A stretch of 63,690 bases of DNA, filler included, from Octopus bimaculoides (taxonomy: Eukaryota), in assembly GCF_001194135.2 (NCBI RefSeq). It is 4 parts of 3 records of this genome, joined end to end, with 100 filler letters (N's around TTAATTAATTAA, not from the genome) between each part and the next. Parts side by side here need not be neighbours in the genome. Positions count along the whole stretch, not along the records: positions 52,167 to 63,690 come from NC_069004.1; 3 more parts are not named here. One strand, written 5' to 3'. Positions 52,293 to 63,690 of the stretch are shown here, in pieces. Within the stretch, counting starts at the first letter, position 1. Each line of letters starts with the position of its first letter. Below the pieces are notes generated by a model. It ran no database searches. It was not told the DNA's origin and saw nothing but the letters and a program-made list of their open reading frames with translations. A program made the position numbers and the translations under genes.

Positions 52293-53762
52293 ACCGTGGT
52301 TCTCCACCAACAACTCATGCACCTACCTGGAAGTTCTGGAGAAGGTTGTCCTCTAGAAGGAACGCAAATGATAAGAAAGGCGGAGATAGGGGGGAATACG
52401 GCGGCAGTCTTCTCGTGAGCCACTCCGATGGACGCGGAAGACGTGAATGTATTCTCAAAGAAACTATACGTCTCTCTAATGGCGTATCCAACGAAGAAGA
52501 CGACCATCTCGAAGACCTCCCCGACGTTCTCGATAACAACGCTCTGCGACGGTCGCAGTCATTGAAGCCCCCACCAAAGCCTCCCAGACTGTTCTTGATG
52601 CGTTCGACTTCGATTACGAATCATAGAAACTCGATAACGCCGTCTTCGTCGCGGAATTCGTTTCTCATGTCCCCGAGCACGAATTCCAAGGAGGAAGCAA
52701 TTATCAAATTTCCTATTAACATTGAAAACGGGCGCTTTTTGAACAACTCTCCGTACAACGGAACCGTTTCTTCCCCCAAAAACCCCGAAGCTGTGGGTCA
52801 AATGACTCCAGATTTAACGACCAAATCCATTCGCAGAGAAAAACGTATCAAATATTCGGCAAACGGCAATCCGATGCGTATCAAAATGGACTTGCCTGCC
52901 ACAGGCCAACTGCAAAATGCCCGTGAAAAGATCACCCGGCATGGCATTATATTACATTGCCTTACTGATTTATTATGTCAGCGGTTGAGACCGGCGGACC
53001 TTATCGAAAAAATGTACAAGGAACATGTGATAACCACAGGCGACCTACAAGCATTCAACGGTCATCCAGACCAGAGATTGGTCTGTGAGAGCTTAGTGAA
53101 CAACGTATCTCGAGGAGACAGCCAACAGTATGAGTCTTTCTGTAACGTCCTTCGCAATACGGACGGTTATAGAGATATTTCCGATATTCTAGACGCTATG
53201 ACTCGGATATCGTTTATGATTTCCGATATTCCGAGTTCAGATCAAGAAGATAATGTCCTCGCTGATGAAACAACGATGAAGTTTGACGTAGGTTTCTATG
53301 ACGATTCGATCCGTCAACTGAAGCCTGTCGTCGAACTTGAACGTATCAAAGACGTCAATGGTAAATGGGGGTTGCACAACTCCAACTCTTGTTCGTCACA
53401 GATATCGTCTAGTTTTCTATCGAAGGATCAACAAAATAACACAACGGACATTAACGGCAATGGAAAAACTAATTTAGTTCCAATGATGACGGTCAGTATT
53501 CTTGGACACAACCTACAAGGTAAACGTGCCATGGTTCTGGCAGAAGTTCTTCACAGATACAACTGTATTCTTGAACTGTGCCTCGGCAAGACACAGTTGA
53601 CAGGTTCGGACATTGGTTTGTTGTCCATACCTTTGCAAAAAAATAACAGTTTAACTGTTTTGGATGTACGACTTAACAATATTGGAAACGAGGGAGCTAC
53701 AATGGTTGGTAACGCCCTGGAACAGAACTCCACTCTCAGACAGCTAAATCTATCGTCAACAG
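52293..53762 (+). CDS. large coding exon: disordered region + CARD-like death fold + RI-type LRRs (gene continues beyond this exon)
   Basis: (CT)n-TTGCAG acceptor at 52292 and G|GTAACT donor at 53763, 1470 nt open, phase 1-1. CARD-like segment at about 52925-53200 (LRPADLIEKMYKEHVIT..LVNNVSRGDSQQYESFCNVLRNTDGYRDISDIL). Three 28-aa LRRs from 53483 plus the start of a fourth. Confidence 0.85.
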
Positions 53763-54164
53763 GTAACTTTCAGTTTAATTTTCAATCTTTTATTTATTTC
53801 CGTCTCCCTCTGATATTTTTGTGTTTTTAACAAAGCCAGTCTGTAAGAGATGTTGTCTCGGGACAAATACTGTAGTAACTGGCCTATCGACAGTGTATAT
53901 ACATTAAGTATGATACATAGATGGCTATTTCAATTAAACACTGCCTCTAATGAGAGTACCAGGTTTTTATCTATTTACTTTACTGTTCGCCTGTGTCCTT
54001 TGTTTTCAGTGTCTTAATGGTTTGACTTAAAAAAGAACCCCTGTTGATACCCAAGTGACTCTAATATAGTTAAAGACTACCATCGAGGGGCAATTCATGT
54101 CATTTCATGAAATTTGGTAGAAATCATTTCAAAGAACTCATCTTTGTAAACGTGACGTTGCTAT

Positions 54165-54505
54165 TAATACTCTTTACTCATTTACTTGTTTCAGTCATTT
54201 GACTGCGGTAAATCGACCCCAGGACTTATTCTTTGTAAGCCTAGTACTTATTCTATCGGTCTTTTGCCGAACCGCTAAGTTACGGGGGACATAAACACAC
54301 CAGCATCGGTTGTCAAGCGATGTTGGGGGGACTAACACAAACACACATATATATATCTATACATATATACGACGGGCTTCTTTCAGTTTCCGTCTACCAA
54401 ATCCACTCACAAGGCTTTGGTCGGCCCGAGGCTATAGTAGAAGACACTTGCCCAAGGTGCCACGCAGTGGGACTGAACCCGGAACCATGTGGTTGGTAAG
54501 CAAGC
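54165..54505 (-). mobile_element. tRNA-derived SINE, family A (CpG-intact copy)
   Basis: Same head, body and tail as 15410-15822; truncated by the N gap. Confidence 0.85.
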
Positions 54506-56406
54506 NNNNNNNNNNNNNNNNNNNNNNNNNNNNNNNNNNNNNNNNNNNNNNNNNNNNNNNNNNNNNNNNNNNNNNNNNNNNNNNNNNNNNNNNNNNNNNN
54601 NNNNNNNNNNNNNNNNNNNNNNNNNNNNNNNNNNNNNNNNNNNNNNNNNNNNNNNNNNNNNNNNNNNNNNNNNNNNNNNNNNNNNNNNNNNNNNNNNNNN
54701 NNNNNNNNNNNNNNNNNNNNNNNNNNNNNNNNNNNNNNNNNNNNNNNNNNNNNNNNNNNNNNNNNNNNNNNNNNNNNNNNNNNNNNNNNNNNNNNNNNNN
54801 NNNNNNNNNNNNNNNNNNNNNNNNNNNNNNNNNNNNNNNNNNNNNNNNNNNNNNNNNNNNNNNNNNNNNNNNNNNNNNNNNNNNNNNNNNNNNNNNNNNN
54901 NNNNNNNNNNNNNNNNNNNNNNNNNNNNNNNNNNNNNNNNNNNNNNNNNNNNNNNNNNNNNNNNNNNNNNNNNNNNNNNNNNNNNNNNNNNNNNNNNNNN
55001 NNNNAAAAAAAAGGGTACCAGTTGGGAACTGGGGATCAATGTAATCGATTTACCTCCTCCTCCGAAAGGAAAGAAGGAATGTTTACGACTGTCTTCGGTC
55101 CACCACTACCCACGAGACATTTGAGACAAATGCTGCCGGAAAACCTCACACAGCAGCCTGGATTCAAAGATCACGCTTCCGTTGTGGTCTGTCAACACCT
55201 AATTATCGTTTTGTTACCAAGTCTTGCCTCCGCCACTCGGACCCAATGAACGGCTTTCGTGATGTCGTTCTAAAAAGGAAACAGGTGCCTCAGCTCTGAC
55301 AATGCAAAGTTTGTTTCGTGTAGAAGAAATGGCGAGACGTCGTCCTCTTTTACCGTTCTCATGTCAGTTGAAATAGATTTTCTCATCGCTTCTTCTCGTC
55401 TGCTAACTTTGCTCGCCTTCTAATCCTTAGTAAGTTTGCTGTGTTTACGATATTCGGATGTGTGTTTTGGTGTTTGTCTGGATTTGATGAGTAGATAGCC
55501 GTAATGTGTGGGTTATCTGCTGTGTCATGAGTCTATCCTCATATATCCACCTACATAACATACATACATACATGCATCCCATATACATACACACACATAC
55601 ATACGTTCATACATACATGCATGCAGACATACGTGCATATATACATTCATACATACACATCTTTATGTATAAATACATTCATACATATACATTTATATAT
55701 AAACACAATCATACAATAGACACACACCATATACATACGTTCATACGTACATGCATACATGCGTGCATATATACATTCATACATACACATCTATACGTAT
55801 AAATACATTCATACATACACATTTATATATAAACACATGCATACAATACACACACACACGTACACACACATACACACACACATATAGAGTGTTTGGAGTG
55901 GTGTTCAGATATTGTACACGGTGTCCACAAGGTCTGGGTACATGGAGTAAATAAAATCATAACATAAACAATTAATCATAACATAAACAATATAAGAAAT
56001 ATTAATTTCTTAAAGTATGTGTTAATCCCCGTGCACACAGACTTTGTGGACACCCTGTGTATTGAGAAAAGGGAGGCAGTCGGAATTTTGGATAATTCTT
56101 CATTAGCTCTTTCGTTGGTTTTTCGAACTCGTCGAGACAAAATTAAAGTCAAAATGATTTTAATTTTGTCTTGATGAGTTCAATAAACGAACGAAAGCGC
56201 TAATAATGGATTATCCCAAATTCTGACTGCCCCCTTTTTCTCACACACAAGATACAGGAAACTTATATATATACACCATTCTGCTTAAATAATGGAACTG
56301 CAAATACAATATCCTTACGTATCTCAATTCAATTTTCATTCCTTCACTTTCCTCTGTATTTCATATCTTCTCTACAATAATTATTACTTAAACATTATCT
56401 CGCACC

Positions 56407-56454
56407 GTCTCTGATGAAGAGATATATAAAATACCCTGGAAACAGCTGTAAGAC
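56407..56454 (+). ncRNA. minimal type-I hammerhead ribozyme motif, Penelope-like terminus
   Basis: GTCT-CTGATGA-(imperfect stem II)-GAAA-CAGCTG-TA-AGAC: intact CUGAUGA and GAAA, palindromic stem III, GUA site, 4-bp stem I. Confidence 0.65.
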
Positions 56455-56514
56455 TTTCTCTTTATAAATGTTCTGAAAACTATTCACAGCCTTGGATTCT
56501 TTTATCTCATTCTG

Positions 56515-56589
<75 letters not shown>

Positions 56590-58211
56590 AACCCATTTTT
56601 ACTTTATATCCGTCAGTTTATATTTTCATATATGCCATTCTATCTCACTGTCTGTCTGTTTGTCTCCCTATTTATGTTTCTATCAATGTGCCTCTCTGTC
56701 CATTTGTCAAGTCATATCTCTCTTCCTTGCGGTACTGTGATATCATTCTCTGTGCATGCGTGTGTGTGTGTGTGTGTGCGTGTGTTTATCTAAATGACTT
56801 GTCTTTTTATCCATCCCTATATCTGTCTCACACCCTTTCACTACCATCATCTCCACCTCCACCACCACCATCATCGTCCCATCGTTATCTTAAACAACAA
56901 TCTACACCTCCTCCTCTACCCGATCCTACCCGTAGTTTAATTCGTTCACGTCATGAGGGCCAGAGGCTAACAGCCAAACGGCCGCCATTATATCTCTGTA
57001 TTAAACACAAAAGTTCTCTATTATCGTCTGACAGTCATGTTGTGAGCTCAGCCTATACAATGAGTCAGGAAGACATAAGATCCCTTCTTTTTTACAAATT
57101 AGAGGCTGTGAACCTTTAAATAAATTAAGGGGAAATGAAATCTGAAGATCACCTTTATTTCTTTTTCTTTTTACTTGGAAAAAGAAAAACAAACAAGATG
57201 GTGTCTATTTTCTTTATTGTGACAAATTTATTTTAACATGGTGTATATAGACTTGACGTTTAATTAGTTACCAGGGGTTTCGTGCGATATTCTTCAGAAC
57301 CACCGGGTACACTTCCGGGTTTCTGAGGTATGAATCGCGTTCCCTTTGGGTAGGGGGTGTAGAATTGTGGAGAAATTCTTATTTTAAGAATGATAGAAAT
57401 TATAATTATTGATTTCAGATTTTGGCACCAGGCCAGTAATTTTAGGGGAGGAGTAAGTCGATTACATCTCAAAGCCAGTGCTCAGCTGGTACTTAATTGA
57501 TCGACCCTCGAAAGGATGAAAGGCAAAGACGACCTCGGTGGAATTTGAACACGCCGGTAGGCTGCAATTTGACGCCGAATGTTAAAACACTTGAAAGTCA
57601 TAAGTGGGATAACTCAATCCAAATCCCATTCAGGCGCGATGGTCATCGATGTTTCGCCATGTTTGTGGCTTATCAACATCACATACCTGAACCGAATTGG
57701 AGGCTAACGATTCTACCAACTCGCCGCCTTATAAATTATTATTATTAGCAATATTTATTCTGGCTCTTTACGTTCTGAGTTCAACTTTGCCTTTTATCCT
57801 TTCGGAATCTATAACATAAAGTACCACTTAAGTACCGGGTTCAGTATAATTGGCTAACCCCTTCCACCTAAAATTGCTGACCTCGTGTTAATATGTGAGC
57901 GACCTGGTAGAATCGTTAGCGTTAGCGCGTGGGACAAAATACTTTGTGGCATTTCTTCAGACTCTTTACGTTCCGAACTCAAGTTTGGCTTTCATCTTTT
58001 GGAAGTCGAACAGGGTTACCTCTATCTCACTCTTTCTCTTCCTCTGTGTGTGTGTGTGTGTGTGTATGTATTTATGTATGTATGTTTAAAGCCGGCTATT
58101 TTCACACATCAACTTTCTCAAAGTCTACCCTGGCGACTTTCAGATGACTAGGTCCCTAGAAATGCAACTATTTATTTTCCCAGTCACCAAACACGCAAGC
58201 AATTATTATTA

Positions 58212-58267
<56 letters not shown>

Positions 58268-58466
58268 GTTGTTGTTGTCGTTGCTGTTGTTACTGATGTG
58301 GTTGTTCTTGTTCTAGTCTTAAGTTTTCCTCAACATTCAGACAGCGCTCCATTATCGTTTTCGTGTCAACATTTTGATAATCGCCGTCAGTGAATGACTC
58401 AGTCAAACAGACACGAGGTTTATTATGTAATAAATACAACACCTAAACCCCCACCACACACACACA

Positions 58467-58515
<49 letters not shown>

Positions 58516-59884
58516 CTTTGTGCGTCAAAGAGAAGGACTGTCCTATATATATATGTGCCATCTTTTCTCTCTCTCTAACTCTCATTCTGTCGTCTGTAGT
58601 CTGTCGTCTGTCGTCTGTCGTCTGACACTGCCAAATTCAAAATCCTTTTTCAAATCTGTTTCTTAACTTGAGATATCCTTTACGTTTATTTTTCCTTCTT
58701 CTTCTTCTTTCTTCTTTTCCTTATTCCCTTATCGTTTCCCTTCCATTTTTGTTCCCTTTTCTTTTCGTTTCTTCGCTCCTTGTTTTTTTTTTTTTTACTT
58801 CTAACCTCCTCCTCCCCCTCCCAATTCCTACGTCTTCTCTTCTTTCCAACACAAACCTGACACCGTAAATTCAATAAATTTAGAACACAATTGTCCTCAT
58901 GCAGATCGCTCCCGTTAAATATCCCCCGTTTATCCAAAACCACCTCCATTAACATGGTAATGACAATCTGTCTGGTGTAGACATAAAACCCAGCCATTGT
59001 TGCTTTCACCANNNNNNNNNNNNNNNNNNNNNNNNNNNNNNNNNNNNNNNNNNNNNNNNNNNNNNNNNNNNNNNNNNNNNNNNNNNNNNNNNNNNNNNNN
59101 NNNNNNNNNNNNNNNNNNNNNNNNNNNNNNNNNNNNNNNNNNNNNNNNNNNNNNNNNNNNNNNNNNNNNNNNNNNNNNNNNNNNNNNNNNNNNNNNNNNN
59201 NNNNNNNNNNNNNNNNNNNNNNNNNNNNNNNNNNNNNNNNNNNNNNNNNNNNNNNNNNNNNNNNNNNNNNNNNNNNNNNNNNNNNNNNNNNNNNNNNNNN
59301 NNNNNNNNNNNNNNNNNNNNNNNNNNNNNNNNNNNNNNNNNNNNNNNNNNNNNNNNNNNNNNNNNNNNNNNNNNNNNNNNNNNNNNNNNNNNNNNNNNNN
59401 NNNNNNNNNNNNNNNNNNNNNNNNNNNNNNNNNNNNNNNNNNNNNNNNNNNNNNNNNNNNNNNNNNNNNNNNNNNNNNNNNNNNNNNNNNNNNNNNNNNN
59501 NNNNNNNNNNNNNNNNNNNNNNNNNNNNNNNNNNNNNNNNNNNNNNNNNNNNNNNNNNNNNNNNNNNNNNNNNNNNNNNNNNNNNNNNNNNNNNNNNNNN
59601 NNNNNNNNNNNNNNTAAAGAGACACGGGGATGAAACCAGGCAACTAAACAGAGATACAGACAGCCAGACAGATATCCAAACAAACAGATAGAGAGACATC
59701 GTTTTATATGCGGTTTATATTAGTGTGTGTGTGTGTGTGTTTGTGTAGTTTATTTGGGCTGATCCATAGATATAGGTCACTAGACGAGTCTAAATAAACT
59801 ATTGCACTCCGTTTTTGTATTAGATATGTCTGCCTTTCGTTATTACCAAACGATGTATGTGCGTATGTGTGTGCGTGTGTGTGT

Positions 59885-60105
59885 GCGATGGAGTGCTGAA
59901 ATGATCCAGGCTTTGAGTAAAAGAAAATACAGGAGGATCAGTTAATCATGATTTTAGACAACATAATCCCTTTCCAGAGTCACACACTTATTTCGGCGTT
60001 CTTTCAGTTTTTCTAAGCTCTGTAAAAGAACTCGGATGGTTAGGCCTCCAGCCAGGCCTTTCGTGCCACCATTAAAGCCAGGAATTTTTCCTCACCCCAC
60101 TCGTA
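59885..60105. mobile_element. mariner-type MITE, second copy of 23040-23259
   Basis: Collinear internal sequence (GTAAAAGAAAATACAGGAGGATCAGTTAAT..CACACACTTATT) and an ACTCGTA end. Confidence 0.8.
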
Positions 60106-60199
60106 TGTATGTACGTACGTATGTATGTATGTATGTATGTATGTATGTATGTATGTATGTACGTATGTACGTACGTACATATGTATGTATGTATGTATA

Positions 60200-60540
60200 T
60201 ATATTGTTGTTGGCACTCCGTCGCTTACGACGTCGAGGGTTCCAGTTGATCCGATCAACGGAACAGCCTGCTCGTGAAATTAACGTGAAAGTGGCTGAGC
60301 ACTCCACAGGCACGCGTAACCTTAACGTAGTTCTCGGGGATATTCAGCGTGACACAGTGTGACAAGGCTGACCCTTTGAATTACAGGCACAACAGAAACA
60401 GGAAGTAAGAGTGAGAGAAAGTTGTGGTGGAAGAGTACAACAGGGTTCGCCACCATCCCCTACCGGAGCCTCGTGGAGCTTTAGGTGTTTTCGCTCAATA
60501 AACACTCAAAACGCCCGGTCTGGGAATCGAAACCGCGGTC

Positions 60541-60545
<5 letters not shown>
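60200..60545 (-). mobile_element. tRNA-derived SINE, family C
   Basis: Minus-strand B-box GGTTTCGATTCC and 3' domain CTGTGGAGTGCTCAGCCAC..GAGCAGGCTGTTCCGTTGATCGGATCAACTGGAA. Partial copy at 63035-63215. Confidence 0.75.
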
Positions 60546-60580
<35 letters not shown>

Positions 60581-61585
60581 CTGTATTGAAGACAAAAGTT
60601 CTCTATTAGCATCTGACAGTTGTAAGCTCAGCTAAACTTGTATCGTGTACCTCTCAACCATCTATGTCAAGCGATAGATTTATAGCAAGTTCCATAGTTA
60701 AGTGTTTCAATAATTAAAAAGATTATAACAGTTTAAGAGCTGACTCGCTTGAGTCGTCGTAAACTTGTCCTTCAGAAATTCAGCTGGACTTGCAAACACT
60801 ACTTTGTCATGCTAGATTTGGGATTTGAAAAATTAACGACTTAATTACGATATCAAATGGAAGTTTTGGAACTGAGTGAACTAAGTGAAAAGATATGACC
60901 AATTTTCAAAATTCTACAATTTTTGCAGCACTAAACATTTTTCGTTCCACTTTTGGATATCCTGAAAAGAAATTCCAAACTCATATATATTTTTGATTAT
61001 TCTCTGAGGAATTCTAAAGGACACATCGTTAACTGATTGCTCAATTATATTACATACGCTTCAAAAGCTACTTGCAACACCCGTATACATTTCTATAAAT
61101 CTTAAATATATTTTGTACACAATTACACCAAAATAATACACCACAATCATCTTATACATCTCTGTGATTCTTCATATCGTTTCGTTCTCCTTCTCTACTT
61201 CACTCTCAAACAAACCGCCCTTCCATACTTTCGCTCACAAACTTGCCCACCACTGTGAAAGCAATCCGAATTTCTTTCTCTTCACTTTTTCTCTTTTTTT
61301 CACCCAATCGTCATTTTTCTCTCTATTTCTTTTTCTCCAATTTCTTTCTCTCGTTCATTTCTTCTATTCCGTCGTCCCGCAATATACCCCTATATCGTCC
61401 CGTTTCTTAAAAATCCTTTCACCAACTTCCAACCCAATCGTACATCCACTTCTAAATATTTTGTGATTTCCCAAGATACATTTTTGTAACGTTTTAAGGC
61501 GCTGTATCACTTTAACAGCCTGACCTACAGAAAAGCGGAAAACTGAAGTTATATTAGAGAAGCTTTATCTTCGATTAAACTTTAC

Positions 61586-61646
<61 letters not shown>

Positions 61647-63690
61647 TGTAAAGTCCATACACACACATATTTACATTTGGCTTCTGTACAGTTTCTGTCT
61701 TTAAAATTTCACTGAAAGTGTACTGGTCACCACTATCTTGTGAGTGGTATGTAGAAAACACTTGCCGAAGGTGCCTCGCTATGATTCTGAACCTTATATG
61801 TGTGTGCATATGTGTATACATGCATGTGTGTGCATGTATGTATGTATATATACACACACACCATTAAATTAAATTGAAAATGATTCGTTACAGATACCGA
61901 TATATTTCGTTTGTGAGAGTTAATCAAATGAATGTCATATTCCTTTCAGAATTTATAAACTCAGTCAACAGAACTACATTCTGCGTTCGTTTCATAAGAC
62001 TCCTACAGAGCGAAACATATGGCCATCGGTGATGAATCATTCTTTTTACTTTAAAGTAATATATGATATTATTCTTGACAGCTAACCCTGTATAGAGTAC
62101 CTTATTTCAGAGTGATTTCAAGCTGATAACCTGCTTTTGAAATATTGATGTATATGTGTGTGTATACGTCTGCGTATGTATATATGTGTAAGGGGAAGGG
62201 TATCTGTGTGTGTATGCATGCACTTGTGTATATACAAAATATAAGTGCCTGTGAAGCACAGCTATTATGTTTTGTTTTATTAAGAACATATTTTAAGGAT
62301 TTTTCATATTTCTTTAATAAACCTTTGTGTTTTGTTCGAGTCAATAAACTTTCACTTCCATCCGCGTTTCAACCCTAAACCTTTTTTATTCCCCATAAAA
62401 ATCACTCCAGTGAGATTTTTTTTATATATATTGCTATTTTTATAGTCTTTAACTATGATGGCAACGTTGTTGTGGTTGTTATTATTGGTTGTCAGCGGAG
62501 TTTCAATTTTAAAACACGGAGCTTTTATCCTTTATTTTATTTGTTTTTTGGGGCGTTTTTTTTTTCCTTGCAACAATCCGGAAATAACTCTGCTCTGATG
62601 TCTGCCGTTTAGTTTGTTTAATAAAGAAATAAGAGAATTCTCCAATAAAAAATAACAAAGGAAACTATAATCTAATCACTTTTACAATAATACAGACACA
62701 CACGGCTGCTGTATAAGTCGTTAAATCAATCACCTTTTAACGTGGCACTCATAAATGAAACGTTGTTATAACACTCGGCGCCATTCTGTTTCGTTATGTA
62801 AAATAACATAACCGAGGATGGTCTTTTAGAGTCAAAATGTCTGCAACTTGAACCACCATACATACACCACTCCAACTTTCCAGGAACTGATTATCCGGAA
62901 CCTCTTATAATCCGTGTTAGTTTACAAGCAGGAACATCAAATTCCCGCGACCGCTAGACGTGTTTACTTGGCGGCTCTGTACAATATTGATAAACTTGTT
63001 TGAAAAGAAAAGAAAAAAGAAAGAAAGAAAAAACTGGTACTCCGTCGGTTATGACGACGAGTATTCCAGCTGATCCGAGATCAACGGAACAGCCTACTCG
63101 TGAAATTATTGCACAAGTAGCTGAGCACTCCACAGACACGCGTACTCTTGGCGATGTTCTCTGGGAGATTCAGCGTGACACAGAACGTGATGAGGTTGAC
63201 CCTTTGAAATACAGGTTCTATTCATTTTTGCCAGCCATATGCATGTGTGTGTGTGCATGTGTATGTGTGTATGTATGTGTATACATAAATATATGTGTAT
63301 GTATTTCTAGCAATACTGATGCTGACCAGTGGCCCCTGTCACTTTAGTGACGTATTTATTTCTGGCTTTAGGTTGTTAAATTGCGAATTAGTCACCCATA
63401 TTATATATAATATATTAAGCCTTCATTCCTCTTCTCGAGGCTCTTCCTCTTTTCTTTTATTTTCCTTTTATGTATTTTTCTTCATTCTGATGAAGCTCCA
63501 TGCTCCAGCTCAGATGTGTTACAAAATATGACGAATATTATTCTCAGAATTTTCATTGGCGACATTGTAGGACATTGGAAGCAGAAACGGCTGTTAGATA
63601 TGATAAGAGTTTTGTATTAAAAAGTAATAATCGATGTTAGTCAGTTGTTGTTGATCAAGATTTCTCCATTTTCTGCTTAATTGATATATA

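What the first reader, a model, noticed from the sequence alone, without database searches (positions are those of the whole stretch)
52293..53762. CARD-like domain linked to RI-type LRRs with no NACHT between them: candidate non-canonical immune/death-fold sensor
Seen: one exon encodes about 210 aa of Ser/Pro/Arg-rich sequence, a ~92-aa CARD-like fold, a ~94-aa linker and three exact 28-aa LRRs (MMTVSILG..., ILELCLGK..., LTVLDVRL...). Established: NLRs place a several-hundred-residue NACHT/NB-ARC module between the death fold and the LRRs. Here both are on the same exon, with no room for it and no Walker A. Inference: this could be a NACHT-less sensor/adaptor or decoy, or the front of a larger protein such as LRR-Roc-COR. 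The synonymous-position CpG content and intact 490-codon frame in a decayed neighbourhood argue it is functional.
Basis: partly seen in the sequence, partly recalled or inferred. Interest (0 to 1): 0.7.

Follow-up and report, generated by a model that had tools for sequence, protein, structure and literature searches.

The report
CARD–LRR protein lacking a NACHT domain
This octopus exon encodes most of a conserved but unstudied protein of molluscs, annelids and brachiopods that joins a caspase-recruitment domain directly to leucine-rich repeats, without the ATPase module that links the two in NOD-like immune receptors.

Summary
Window 52293-53762 (+) is one 1470-nt coding exon of Octopus bimaculoides LOC106881169 (100% identical to its RefSeq proteins). 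It encodes a 210-aa disordered region, a CARD, a conserved beta-hairpin with a Ser-rich loop, and three exact 28-aa ribonuclease-inhibitor-type LRRs plus the start of a fourth.

- **CARD:** Pfam scores 25.5 bits against a cutoff of 23.9. The AlphaFold2 model has pLDDT 92, and its best structural match is the Apaf-1 CARD (TM 0.84).
- **No NACHT:** Full-length orthologues are 710-850 aa and add only eight more LRRs and a conserved C-terminal cap. None of 79 family sequences has a genuine Walker A motif. The LRR-Roc-COR idea is therefore rejected.
- **Distribution:** The family is low-copy and found in molluscs, annelids and a brachiopod. All members are annotated "uncharacterized".
- **Selection:** dN/dS against another octopus is 0.059. 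The concave LRR face is nearly invariant, which fits a conserved partner better than a fast-evolving pathogen ligand.
- **Other features:** One alternative first exon carries a myristoylation-type start (MGxxxSC). The disordered region carries an invariant PPKPPR motif and RRxS sites.

Best reading: a membrane-tethered, phospho-regulated CARD adaptor. The function is inferred, not shown.

The parts
52293..53762 (+). Large coding exon of O. bimaculoides LOC106881169. It has 1470 nt: 2 nt completing a split codon, 489 whole codons, and 1 nt starting a Gly codon.
   Evidence: Splice sites read. The translation is 100% identical to XP_052832430-32 and XP_014786946.2. The O. vulgaris model uses the same junctions. 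dN/dS is 0.059 with no indels against another octopus.
52278..52292 (+). 3' splice site: polypyrimidine tract ttctctctctctctt followed by gcag.
   Evidence: Sequence. The reading frame is closed upstream, with stops at the codons just before 52278.
52295..52924 (+). N-terminal region of 210 aa, predicted intrinsically disordered (S/R/N/P-rich), yet under very strong purifying selection.
   Evidence: pLDDT is below 50 for residues 1-213 of the full-length model. Composition. dN/dS is 0.031.
52328..52360 (+). Conserved basic-hydrophobic motif WKFWRRLSSRR. It contains an RRxS basophilic-kinase consensus and is a candidate membrane-binding or phospho-switch element.
   Evidence: W15 and W18 are invariant and F17 nearly invariant in 33 orthologues. 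The proposed role is inference.
52547..52615 (+). Conserved motif RRSQSLKPPPKPPRLFLMRSTSI. It holds an invariant PPKPPR (PxxPxR, class II SH3-ligand consensus) flanked by RRxS and Ser clusters.
   Evidence: P96, K98, P99, P100 and R101 are invariant in 33 molluscan sequences. The motif is also present in annelid and brachiopod members. SH3 or kinase binding is inference.
52925..53245 (+). CARD: a six-helix death-fold bundle. Helices lie at 52937-52984, 52991-53020, 53036-53056, 53072-53113, 53120-53155 and 53171-53224. The family signature AF(R/N)GHPD(R/Q)RLVCES is at 53051-53092.
   Evidence: Pfam CARD 25.5 bits, E 1.3e-5. AlphaFold2 pLDDT 92. Foldseek best hit Apaf-1 CARD, TM 0.84, rmsd 1.8 A, and the top 44 hits are all CARDs. 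Helix coordinates.
53276..53341 (+). Conserved beta-hairpin (MKFDVGFYDDSIRQLKPVVELE) between the CARD and the LRRs. It is probably the N-terminal cap of the LRR solenoid.
   Evidence: Strands E330-339 and E344-347 have block-mean pLDDT of about 93 and 80 in the full-length model. The segment is conserved from molluscs to annelids and a brachiopod as 'FDIxYY...'. The capping role is inferred, because model coordinates could not be inspected.
53342..53482 (+). Disordered loop with invariant serines (KRxSRLSxxS in most molluscs, SSQISSS here at 53393-53413). Candidate phosphorylation loop.
   Evidence: pLDDT is below 50 for residues 351-394. S371 and S374 are invariant.
53483..53566 (+). LRR 1 (28 aa, MMTVSILGHNLQGKRAMVLAEVLHRYNC).
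   Evidence: Beta-strand E398-406 in the model.
53567..53650 (+). LRR 2 (28 aa, ILELCLGKTQLTGSDIGLLSIPLQKNNS).
   Evidence: E430, L431, G434, K435 and T436 are invariant.
53651..53734 (+). LRR 3 (28 aa, LTVLDVRLNNIGNEGATMVGNALEQNST). This is the Pfam LRR_6 hit.
   Evidence: LRR_6, 26.6 bits against a cutoff of 23.4..
53735..53762 (+). First 9 to 10 residues of LRR 4 (LRQLNLSSTG). The repeat continues in the next exon, which is not in this piece.
53763..53830 (+). 5' splice site GTAACT and the intron read-through frame (22 codons plus a TAA stop codon at 53828-53830). All O. bimaculoides RefSeq isoforms and the partial O. sinensis model use this frame as their C-terminus.
   Evidence: P0083, P0085, P0087 and P0090 end ...SSTGNFQFNFQSFIYFRLPLIFLCF. 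The O. vulgaris models instead splice on to eight more LRRs. An ATTAAA lies at 53933. Whether the read-through is a real short isoform is unresolved.

Best explanation
The exon is the main coding exon of a conserved lophotrochozoan gene, Octopus bimaculoides LOC106881169. Its product is a NACHT-free CARD-LRR protein of about 730-815 aa.

**Shown: the domain order.**
1. An alternative first exon. One conserved version starts MG(G/S)T(L/F)SC, which fits the myristoylation consensus. The other starts M(S/T)xC(S/F)..NVxR...
2. About 200 aa of disordered sequence carrying invariant short motifs: WKFWRRLSxRR, RRSxSLKPPPKPPR and KIKIVTPDL.
3. An Apaf-1/NOD1-like CARD.
4. A beta-hairpin, then a Ser-rich loop.
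5. Eleven perfectly periodic 28-aa ribonuclease-inhibitor-type LRRs.
6. A C-terminal ...KLKLLLWGN cap.

**Inferred: the mechanism.**
- The protein sits on a membrane through N-terminal lipidation and the basic-hydrophobic motif.
- It is regulated by basophilic kinases or SH3 proteins acting on the disordered region.
- It binds a conserved ligand or partner on the nearly invariant concave face of the LRR horseshoe.
- It uses its CARD for homotypic recruitment of a CARD-bearing effector such as a caspase, an Apaf-1/NLR-type protein or another adaptor.
- With no NTPase, any oligomerisation must come from partner-driven clustering on the membrane or from CARD-CARD assembly, not from a nucleotide switch.
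- The low copy number and strong conservation suggest a signalling adaptor with a fixed partner, not a fast-evolving pathogen receptor.
For: - **Identity of the gene.** The exon translation is 100% identical to O. bimaculoides LOC106881169 isoforms and 98% identical to O. vulgaris P0001.
- **CARD.** Pfam 25.5 bits for the window and up to 42.1 bits in orthologues. No other death-fold family is hit. The model has pLDDT 92 and matches Apaf-1 CARD at TM 0.84.
- **Whole-protein architecture.** The model gives a disordered region 1-213, CARD 214-314, hairpin 330-347, loop 351-394 and LRRs 400-707. The LRRs resemble ribonuclease inhibitor (E 6e-49) and NLRP14/5/3.
- **No NTPase.** None of 79 family sequences has a Walker A motif, apart from one chance match inside an LRR.
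- **Distribution.** An exhaustive profile search of 1.84 billion representatives with the N-terminus-to-linker profile gives only 35 hits. The full architecture appears in molluscs, annelids (Owenia, Paralvinella) and the brachiopod Lingula.
- **Selection.** dN/dS is 0.059 over 489 codons with no indels, against 15% divergence with indels in the flanking intron.
- **Conserved concave face.** Repeat positions 5, 7, 8 and 9 have 0.2-0.5 bits of entropy. The helix face has about 2 bits.
- **Lipidation-type starts.** Twelve members, including O. bimaculoides isoform X2, fit the myristoylation consensus.
- **Transcripts.** Uninterrupted 810-aa ORFs occur in 3.4-4 kb contigs from 22 sequencing runs of a decapodiform cephalopod.
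Against: - No functional data exist for any family member, and no literature was found.
- Lipidation, phosphorylation, SH3 binding and CARD-CARD recruitment are inferred from sequence motifs only.
- The partner CARD protein and the LRR ligand are unknown.
- The downstream LRR exons are not in this piece.
- All RefSeq models for this species end by reading through the donor site. The product in O. bimaculoides could therefore be a shorter protein with only 3.4 LRRs.
- Model coordinates and predicted aligned errors were not available, so the CARD-to-LRR packing could not be examined.
Confidence: 0.55

Rival explanations
1. It is a genuine innate-immune pattern-recognition receptor. The LRRs bind a microbial or danger ligand directly, and the CARD then nucleates a caspase or NF-kB signalling assembly. 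In effect it would be an NLR without the NOD.
For: Both end domains are those of NOD1/NOD2-type NLRs. The CARD is closest to Apaf-1 and NOD1 and the LRRs to NLRP14/5/3, NOD2 and RI. Molluscs have very few canonical NLRs (PMC3879445; PMC9334734). Exon CpG observed/expected is 1.21; by general knowledge this is typical of unmethylated, inducible invertebrate genes.
Against: The family has one or two copies per species with clear orthology across three phyla. dN/dS is 0.059. The putative ligand-binding concave face is almost invariant across molluscs. No expression or challenge data were available.
Confidence: 0.2
2. It is a decoy or negative regulator. The CARD would cap or sequester a CARD effector, as vertebrate CARD-only proteins do, or the LRR would sequester a partner. 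No downstream assembly would be triggered.
For: There is no oligomerisation engine. It has a single CARD. The read-through isoform annotated in O. bimaculoides would be a still smaller protein with a CARD and three LRRs.
Against: Nothing separates this from an activating adaptor on sequence grounds. Strong conservation of every module, including the lipidation exon and the disordered-region motifs, fits a multi-partner scaffold at least as well.
Confidence: 0.12
3. It is the front of a larger multidomain protein such as LRR-Roc-COR, or a truncated or decaying NLR whose NACHT exon lies elsewhere.
For: Only one exon of the gene lies in the piece. Automated names such as 'NLRC3', 'NLRP2-like' and 'NLRP5' are attached to some orthologues.
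Against: Full-length orthologues and spliced mRNA contigs end about 240 aa after this exon, with a conserved tail, a stop codon and 3' UTR. No NACHT, Roc or COR Pfam hit was found, and no Walker A. The CARD and the LRRs are contiguous on this exon. Selection is strongly purifying.
Confidence: 0.02
4. In O. bimaculoides the main product is the short read-through form: disordered region, CARD, 3.4 LRRs and a 22-aa tail ending at 53830. It would arise by intron retention or intronic polyadenylation.
For: All four RefSeq isoforms of LOC106881169 and the partial O. sinensis model end this way. An ATTAAA lies about 100 nt past the stop.
Against: The read-through tail is not conserved; it diverges and runs longer in the other octopus contig. 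The donor CAG|GTAACT is a good match to consensus. O. vulgaris, Argonauta and decapodiform transcripts all splice on to eight more LRRs. Assembly gaps at 54506-55004 and 59012-59614 may have prevented the annotation pipeline from reaching the downstream exons.
Confidence: 0.1

Closest known systems
NOD1/NOD2 and other NLRC-type NOD-like receptors (CARD-NACHT-LRR)
   Same: An N-terminal CARD and a C-terminal array of 28-aa ribonuclease-inhibitor-type LRRs. NOD1 CARD and NOD2/NLRP LRRs are among the best structural matches.
   Different: There is no NACHT/NOD module, winged-helix or helical domains, and no Walker A. About 85 residues (a beta-hairpin and a loop) separate the CARD from the LRRs, not about 400. 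A long, lipid-anchored disordered N-terminus precedes the CARD.
Apaf-1 CARD
   Same: Best structural match to the predicted CARD: TM 0.84, rmsd 1.8 A over 89 columns. It is also among the top sequence-profile hits in the PDB, after two designed proteins and RIG-I.
   Different: Only 19-20% identical. Apaf-1 couples its CARD to NB-ARC and WD40 domains. The signature loop AFRGHPDRRLVCES is specific to this family.
Ribonuclease inhibitor and the NLRP14/NLRP5 LRR domains
   Same: The same LRR class. phmmer gives E 6e-49 to RI, and Foldseek gives E 1e-20 to NLRP14.
   Different: RI is an LRR-only protein with alternating 28/29-aa repeats. Here there are 11 repeats of exactly 28 aa, with a hairpin cap and a ...LLWGN C-terminal cap.
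PIDD1 (LRR-ZU5-ZU5-UPA-death domain)
   Same: From general knowledge, a death-fold protein that combines LRRs with a death-fold domain and has no NTPase. It signals by death-fold assembly in the PIDDosome (PMC11874512).
   Different: The domain order is reversed. PIDD1 has a death domain rather than a CARD, typical rather than RI-type LRRs, and ZU5/UPA autoprocessing domains. No ZU5 or UPA hit was found here.
Membrane-anchored CARD adaptors (MAVS, CARD19/BinCARD)
   Same: From general knowledge, a single CARD tethered to a membrane. MAVS also has a proline-rich region next to its CARD. BinCARD appears among the structural hits.
   Different: Those proteins use C-terminal transmembrane anchors and have no LRRs. 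Here the anchor would be N-terminal lipidation, which is inferred.
CARD-only proteins (CARD16/17/18) and other death-fold decoys
   Same: A CARD without an enzymatic or oligomerising module.
   Different: Decoys are small, young, lineage-specific duplicates. This is a roughly 750-aa multidomain protein conserved across three phyla.

Membership tests
NOD-like receptors (NLR / STAND NTPases) | Central NACHT or NB-ARC NTPase domain with Walker A and Walker B motifs | tested here: not met
   No NACHT or NB-ARC Pfam hit in the exon or in four full-length orthologues. No genuine Walker A motif in 79 family sequences. The full-length model accounts for every ordered residue as CARD, hairpin or LRR.
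NOD-like receptors (NLR / STAND NTPases) | C-terminal RI-type LRR array | tested here: met
   Pfam LRR_6 at 72-79 bits in full-length orthologues. Eleven 28-aa repeats. NLRP and NOD2 LRRs are among the best matches.
NOD-like receptors (NLR / STAND NTPases) | N-terminal death-fold effector domain | tested here: met
   CARD present.
CARD (Pfam PF00619, death-fold superfamily) | Sequence match above Pfam's gathering score | tested here: met
   The window segment 52925-53245 scores 25.5 bits against a cutoff of 23.9. The whole-exon scan gives 22.5 bits. 15 of 26 molluscan members and 9 of 13 in the mixed-phylum set (7 annelid/brachiopod, 6 mollusc) match CARD at E <= 0.01, the best at 42.1 bits. 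No Death, DED or PYD hits.
CARD (Pfam PF00619, death-fold superfamily) | Six-helix antiparallel bundle superposable on solved CARDs | tested here: met
   The AlphaFold2 model has pLDDT 92 and six helices. The top 44 Foldseek hits are CARDs. Apaf-1 gives TM 0.84 and rmsd 1.8 A. This is a prediction, not an experimental structure.
CARD (Pfam PF00619, death-fold superfamily) | Homotypic CARD-CARD binding or filament formation | not testable with these tools
   Needs pull-down, yeast two-hybrid or electron microscopy with candidate CARD partners.
Ribonuclease-inhibitor-type LRR (Pfam LRR_6) | 28-29-aa repeats with an LxxLxLxxN/CxL strand and an alpha-helical convex side | tested here: met
   Three exact 28-aa repeats in the exon and 11 in the protein, with alternating strand and helix in the model. 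RI matches at E 6e-49.
ROCO proteins (LRR-Roc-COR) | Roc GTPase and COR domains C-terminal to the LRRs | tested here: not met
   Orthologues end 20-30 aa after the last LRR with a conserved tail and a stop codon. No Roc or COR hit and no P-loop.
PIDD1-like LRR and death-fold proteins | ZU5-UPA autoprocessing module and a C-terminal death domain | tested here: not met
   No ZU5, UPA or Death Pfam hits. The death-fold domain is a CARD and lies N-terminal to the LRRs.
N-myristoylated proteins | Met-Gly start fitting G-{EDRKHPFYW}-x(2)-[STAGCN]-{P} | tested here: met
   Twelve family members, including isoform X2 of this same gene (P0085, MGSAFSC...), fit the pattern. That first exon lies outside the piece. 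Actual lipidation cannot be tested here.

The most novel reading that the evidence does not exclude
The family is a previously unrecognised class of lophotrochozoan receptor. It would couple LRR-based ligand recognition at a membrane directly to CARD-driven assembly of a caspase or NF-kB signalling platform, with no STAND NTPase. Lipid-anchored clustering would replace the nucleotide switch of NLRs.
Probability: 0.2. Interest if true: 0.75.

Novelty: new variant of a known kind. Interest (0 to 1): 0.5.

Why it matters
NOD-like receptors are defined by the NTPase that sits between the effector domain and the LRR sensor, and activation models depend on that switch. This family joins the same two end modules directly and has kept that arrangement across molluscs, annelids and brachiopods.

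If it signals, LRR-to-death-fold coupling can work without a nucleotide switch. That would offer a candidate explanation for how animals with few canonical NLRs, such as many molluscs, wire CARD pathways.

If it is not immune, it would be a death-fold adaptor with a conserved endogenous partner, which is also unstudied.

Separately, the O. bimaculoides gene models appear truncated at this exon and may need correction.

Tried and rejected
- **Downstream exons.** I searched the piece for the remaining exons with tblastn. None lies within the roughly 10 kb downstream, which is repeat-rich intron with two assembly gaps.
- **O. vulgaris locus.** Looking up the P0001 locus found no record.
- **dN/dS against a cuttlefish-type transcript.** It was saturated (pS 0.88, pN 0.20), so I used a closer octopus contig instead.
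- **PDB sequence search with the CARD profile.** It gave only non-significant E-values (0.04-0.5), although every hit was a CARD or a CARD-based design. Structure comparison settled the question.
- **PF27087.** I suspected it might be a family-specific domain. It is the generic LRR_TMOD-LMOD family, also found in RanGAP-like, fungal and NLRP3 proteins.
- **Third homologue search.** A CARD-to-LRR1 profile returned only fragments and no new phyla.
- **Pfam CBM_10 hit.** E 0.11 over 15 residues; treated as noise.
- **The single 'Walker A' match.** AGLEIGKT in P0035 lies inside the LRR 'IGKTQL' motif, so it is not a P-loop.
- **tRNA and Rfam scans of the piece.** Nothing found.
- **Literature.** Searches for a CARD-LRR protein without NACHT in molluscs found nothing relevant.
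Full report
**1. The observation**

The piece (52167-63690) has the look of a cephalopod genome. It contains TA/CA microsatellites, SINE-like repeats and two assembly gaps.

One long open frame lies on the + strand. Reading the DNA shows a strong 3' splice site (ttctctctctctcttgcag|AC at 52292/52293) and a 5' splice site (ACAG|GTAACT at 53762/53763). It has 1470 nt, frame 52295+3n, and 489 whole codons plus a split codon at each end. By chance, 490 open codons have a probability of about 6e-11.

**2. Identity of the gene**

The translation is 100% identical over all 489 residues to the RefSeq isoforms of Octopus bimaculoides LOC106881169. It is also identical to UniProt A0A0L8FTZ9, named 'CARD domain-containing protein'. 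It is 98% identical to O. vulgaris models of 730-815 aa.

The O. vulgaris model P0001 uses the same two junctions (MTH|RGSPP and LNLSSTG|MDGAG). Only this exon of the gene lies in the piece. Residues 494-730 of P0001 have no match in the roughly 10 kb downstream.

**3. Domains in the exon**

- **Disordered region.** Residues 1-210 are S/R/N/P-rich and predicted disordered.
- **CARD.**
  - The 107-aa segment 52925-53245 scores 25.5 bits (E 1.3e-5) against Pfam CARD, above the 23.9 cutoff. The whole-exon scan gives 22.5 bits.
  - Orthologues reach 26-42 bits, and no other death-fold family is hit.
  - An AlphaFold2 model built from 26 family sequences has pLDDT 92 and six helices.
  - Its 44 best PDB matches are all CARDs, led by Apaf-1 CARD (TM 0.84, rmsd 1.8 A), then NOD1, RAIDD, ARC, CARD9 and others.
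- **The 94-aa 'linker'.** It consists of a conserved, confidently predicted beta-hairpin (53276-53341) followed by a disordered loop with invariant serines.
- **LRRs.** Three exact 28-aa repeats start at 53483, 53567 and 53651, and the first 9 to 10 residues of a fourth start at 53735.
- **Walker A.** None is present.

**4. The whole protein**

[11 protein letters not shown] full-length orthologues align end to end. The full-length model has these parts:

| Residues (P0001) | Element |
|---|---|
| 1-213 | disordered |
| 214-314 | CARD |
| 330-347 | beta-hairpin |
| 351-394 | disordered loop |
| 400-707 | eleven repeats of exactly 28 aa |
| after 707 | cap strand and the tail ...KLKLLLWGN |

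The LRRs are of the ribonuclease-inhibitor class. phmmer gives E 6e-49 to RI, and Foldseek gives E 1e-20 to NLRP14, followed by NLRP5/3, NOD2 and LRRC34.

There is no room for a NACHT, Roc or COR domain. No Pfam hit to any of them was found. No genuine Walker A motif occurs in 79 family sequences.

Spliced mRNA-like contigs of 3.4-4 kb, each with an uninterrupted 810-aa ORF, a stop codon and UTRs, come from 22 sequencing runs of a decapodiform cephalopod. The 'front of a larger LRR-Roc-COR protein' alternative is therefore rejected. The NACHT-less architecture is real.

**5. Distribution**

The first search found orthologues at 29-39% identity in cephalopods, bivalves, gastropods and a chiton. 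Each is 'uncharacterized' or carries an automatic NLR-like name.

I then searched 1.84 billion representative proteins exhaustively with a profile of the N-terminus-to-linker part, leaving out the LRRs. Only 35 proteins scored E <= 1e-3. Besides molluscs, the same full architecture appears in:
- the annelids Owenia fusiformis and Paralvinella palmiformis;
- the brachiopod Lingula anatina, where the model is a head-to-tail fusion of two copies;
- several unnamed contigs.

That architecture includes the PPPKPPR motif, the CARD, the 'FDIxYY' hairpin, the LRRs and the LLWGN tail. The remaining weak hits are unrelated CARD proteins from an echinoderm, a sponge and others.

No deuterostome, ecdysozoan or cnidarian member was seen. 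There is a caveat: the profile was built from molluscs only, and the annelid and brachiopod members scored only 1e-5 to 1e-8. More distant members could have been missed. Species have one or two copies.

**6. Selection**

A genomic contig from another octopus (L005) aligns colinearly across both splice sites.

| Region | Divergence or dN/dS |
|---|---|
| Exon, nucleotide divergence | 5.9%, no indels |
| Downstream intron flank | 15.4%, with indels |
| Exon dN / dS | 0.0147 / 0.2505 = 0.059 |
| Disordered region dN/dS | 0.031 |
| CARD dN/dS | 0.147 |
| Linker dN/dS | 0.049 |
| LRR dN/dS | 0.083 |

CpG observed/expected is 1.21 in the exon and 0.86 in the intron.

**7. Clues to mechanism**

(a) *Alternative N-termini.* Two alternative N-termini are conserved from octopus to bivalves and gastropods.
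- One is MG(G/S)T(L/F)SC... It fits the N-myristoylation consensus and has a nearby Cys. Twelve members carry it, including isoform X2 of this gene.
- The other is M(S/T)xC(S/F)..NVxR.., also with a Cys near the start.
- Both suggest lipid anchoring. This is inference.

(b) *Invariant islands in the disordered region*:
- WKFWRRLSxRR is basic-hydrophobic and contains RRxS.
- RRSxSLKPPPKPPRLFLFRSSS contains PxxPxR, the class II SH3-ligand consensus, flanked by RRxS.
- KIKIVTPDL lies just before the CARD.
- KRxSRLS lies in the loop after the hairpin.
- Together these look like docking and phosphorylation sites. This is inference.

(c) *CARD surface motif.* The CARD carries a family-specific, nearly invariant motif, AFRGHPDRRLVCES. 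In the model it runs from the end of helix 3 through the H3-H4 loop into the start of helix 4.

(d) *Concave face of the LRRs.* Within the LRRs, the solvent-exposed positions of the beta-strand face (repeat positions 5, 7, 8 and 9) have 0.2-0.5 bits of entropy across 33 molluscan sequences. The helical outer face has about 2 bits. The concave face is thus the most conserved surface, which points to a conserved binding partner.

**8. Interpretation**

I read the protein as a membrane-tethered, phospho-regulated adaptor. It would bind a conserved partner on the LRR concave face. Through the CARD it would recruit a CARD-bearing effector.

With no NTPase, assembly would have to be driven by partner-induced clustering or by CARD-CARD polymerisation. 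The architecture is shown. Every step of the mechanism is inferred.

The rivals differ as follows:
- **Direct pathogen sensor.** The domain kinship with NLRs and the scarcity of canonical NLRs in molluscs favour this (PMC3879445; PMC9334734). The low copy number, strong purifying selection and invariant concave face count against it.
- **Decoy or inhibitor.** This cannot be excluded from sequence.
- **Short read-through product.** All O. bimaculoides RefSeq isoforms, and the partial O. sinensis model, read through the donor into the intron and stop at 53828-53830. Three things make an annotation artefact more likely than a real short isoform, but this is unresolved:
  - the read-through tail is not conserved;
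  - the donor is a good match to consensus;
  - assembly gaps lie downstream.

**9. Comparison with known systems**

The protein works most like an NLRC-type receptor with the NOD removed. It is not an NLR, because the defining NTPase was tested for and is absent.

PIDD1 is the best-known LRR-plus-death-fold protein without an NTPase (PMC11874512). It differs in having the reverse domain order, a death domain and a ZU5-UPA module.

MAVS and BinCARD are membrane-anchored single-CARD adaptors, but they have no LRRs. CARD-only decoys are small and evolutionarily young.

I found no paper describing this family or a CARD-LRR architecture without NACHT. The gene exists in databases only as 'uncharacterized', as 'CARD domain-containing protein', or under misleading NLRC3/NLRP-like names.

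**10. Verdict**

It is a new variant of a known kind: a death-fold-plus-LRR signalling protein without the NOD. It is conserved across Lophotrochozoa and uncharacterised.

Interest is moderate at 0.5. It would be higher if the protein proves to be an NTPase-independent receptor.

Noticed in passing
window 53763-53830, and proteins P0083, P0085, P0087, P0090 and P0086: Every RefSeq isoform of O. bimaculoides LOC106881169, and the partial O. sinensis model, ends by reading through the donor site into the intron (22 extra residues, stop at 53828-53830). The O. vulgaris, Argonauta and cuttlefish/squid-type sequences instead continue with eight more LRRs. The O. bimaculoides models are probably truncated, or else this is a real short isoform.
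   Followed up: partly
window 54506-55004 and 59012-59614: Two runs of N (499 and 603 bases) lie inside the intron downstream of the exon. These are assembly gaps and may explain why the gene models stop at this exon.
   Followed up: no
window 60253-60357 and 63079-63183: Two copies of a 105-nt dispersed repeat, 85% identical and in the same orientation. They are presumably an octopus interspersed element. Another SINE-like element at about 54330-54505 is cut off by the gap.
   Followed up: no
window 56063-56243: A near-perfect palindrome: 89-nt arms, 84% complementary, 3 nt apart. It resembles a miniature inverted-repeat element or a foldback.
   Followed up: no
proteins P0005, P0019, P0023, P0011, P0028, P0041, P0003, P0087 (first coding exon, outside the window): A second alternative N-terminus, M(S/T)xC(S/F)xxxNV(K/E)RxLFGGSxYNCRRHE, is conserved from octopus to bivalves and gastropods alongside the MGxxxSC start. 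This suggests two ancient alternative promoters or first exons, both with a Cys near the N-terminus.
   Followed up: partly
protein P0068 (Lingula anatina XP_013395180.1, 1539 aa): The brachiopod model is a head-to-tail fusion of two nearly identical copies of the whole CARD-LRR protein. It is either a tandem gene duplication merged by the annotation or a true two-unit protein.
   Followed up: no
proteins P0073, P0109-P0112 and P0064 (annelid branch), between the CARD and the hairpin: Annelid members carry an extra Cys-rich insert (such as C..C.C or CxxC patterns) between the CARD and the beta-hairpin. Molluscs lack it. It could be a small metal-binding element.
   Followed up: no
loci L007 (8744 nt) and L009 (8895 nt): In two contigs labelled as metagenome assemblies, the whole 709-aa and 740-aa coding sequences are uninterrupted and lie 4.7-5.4 kb from the 5' end of the contig. 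These are either long-UTR transcripts or intron-poor gene copies. In octopus the gene is split by introns longer than 10 kb.
   Followed up: no
protein P0066 (1213 aa, ENA contig): A weak hit of the profile search contains eight tandem, nearly identical CARD-like repeats. This is an unusual poly-CARD protein of unknown origin.
   Followed up: no
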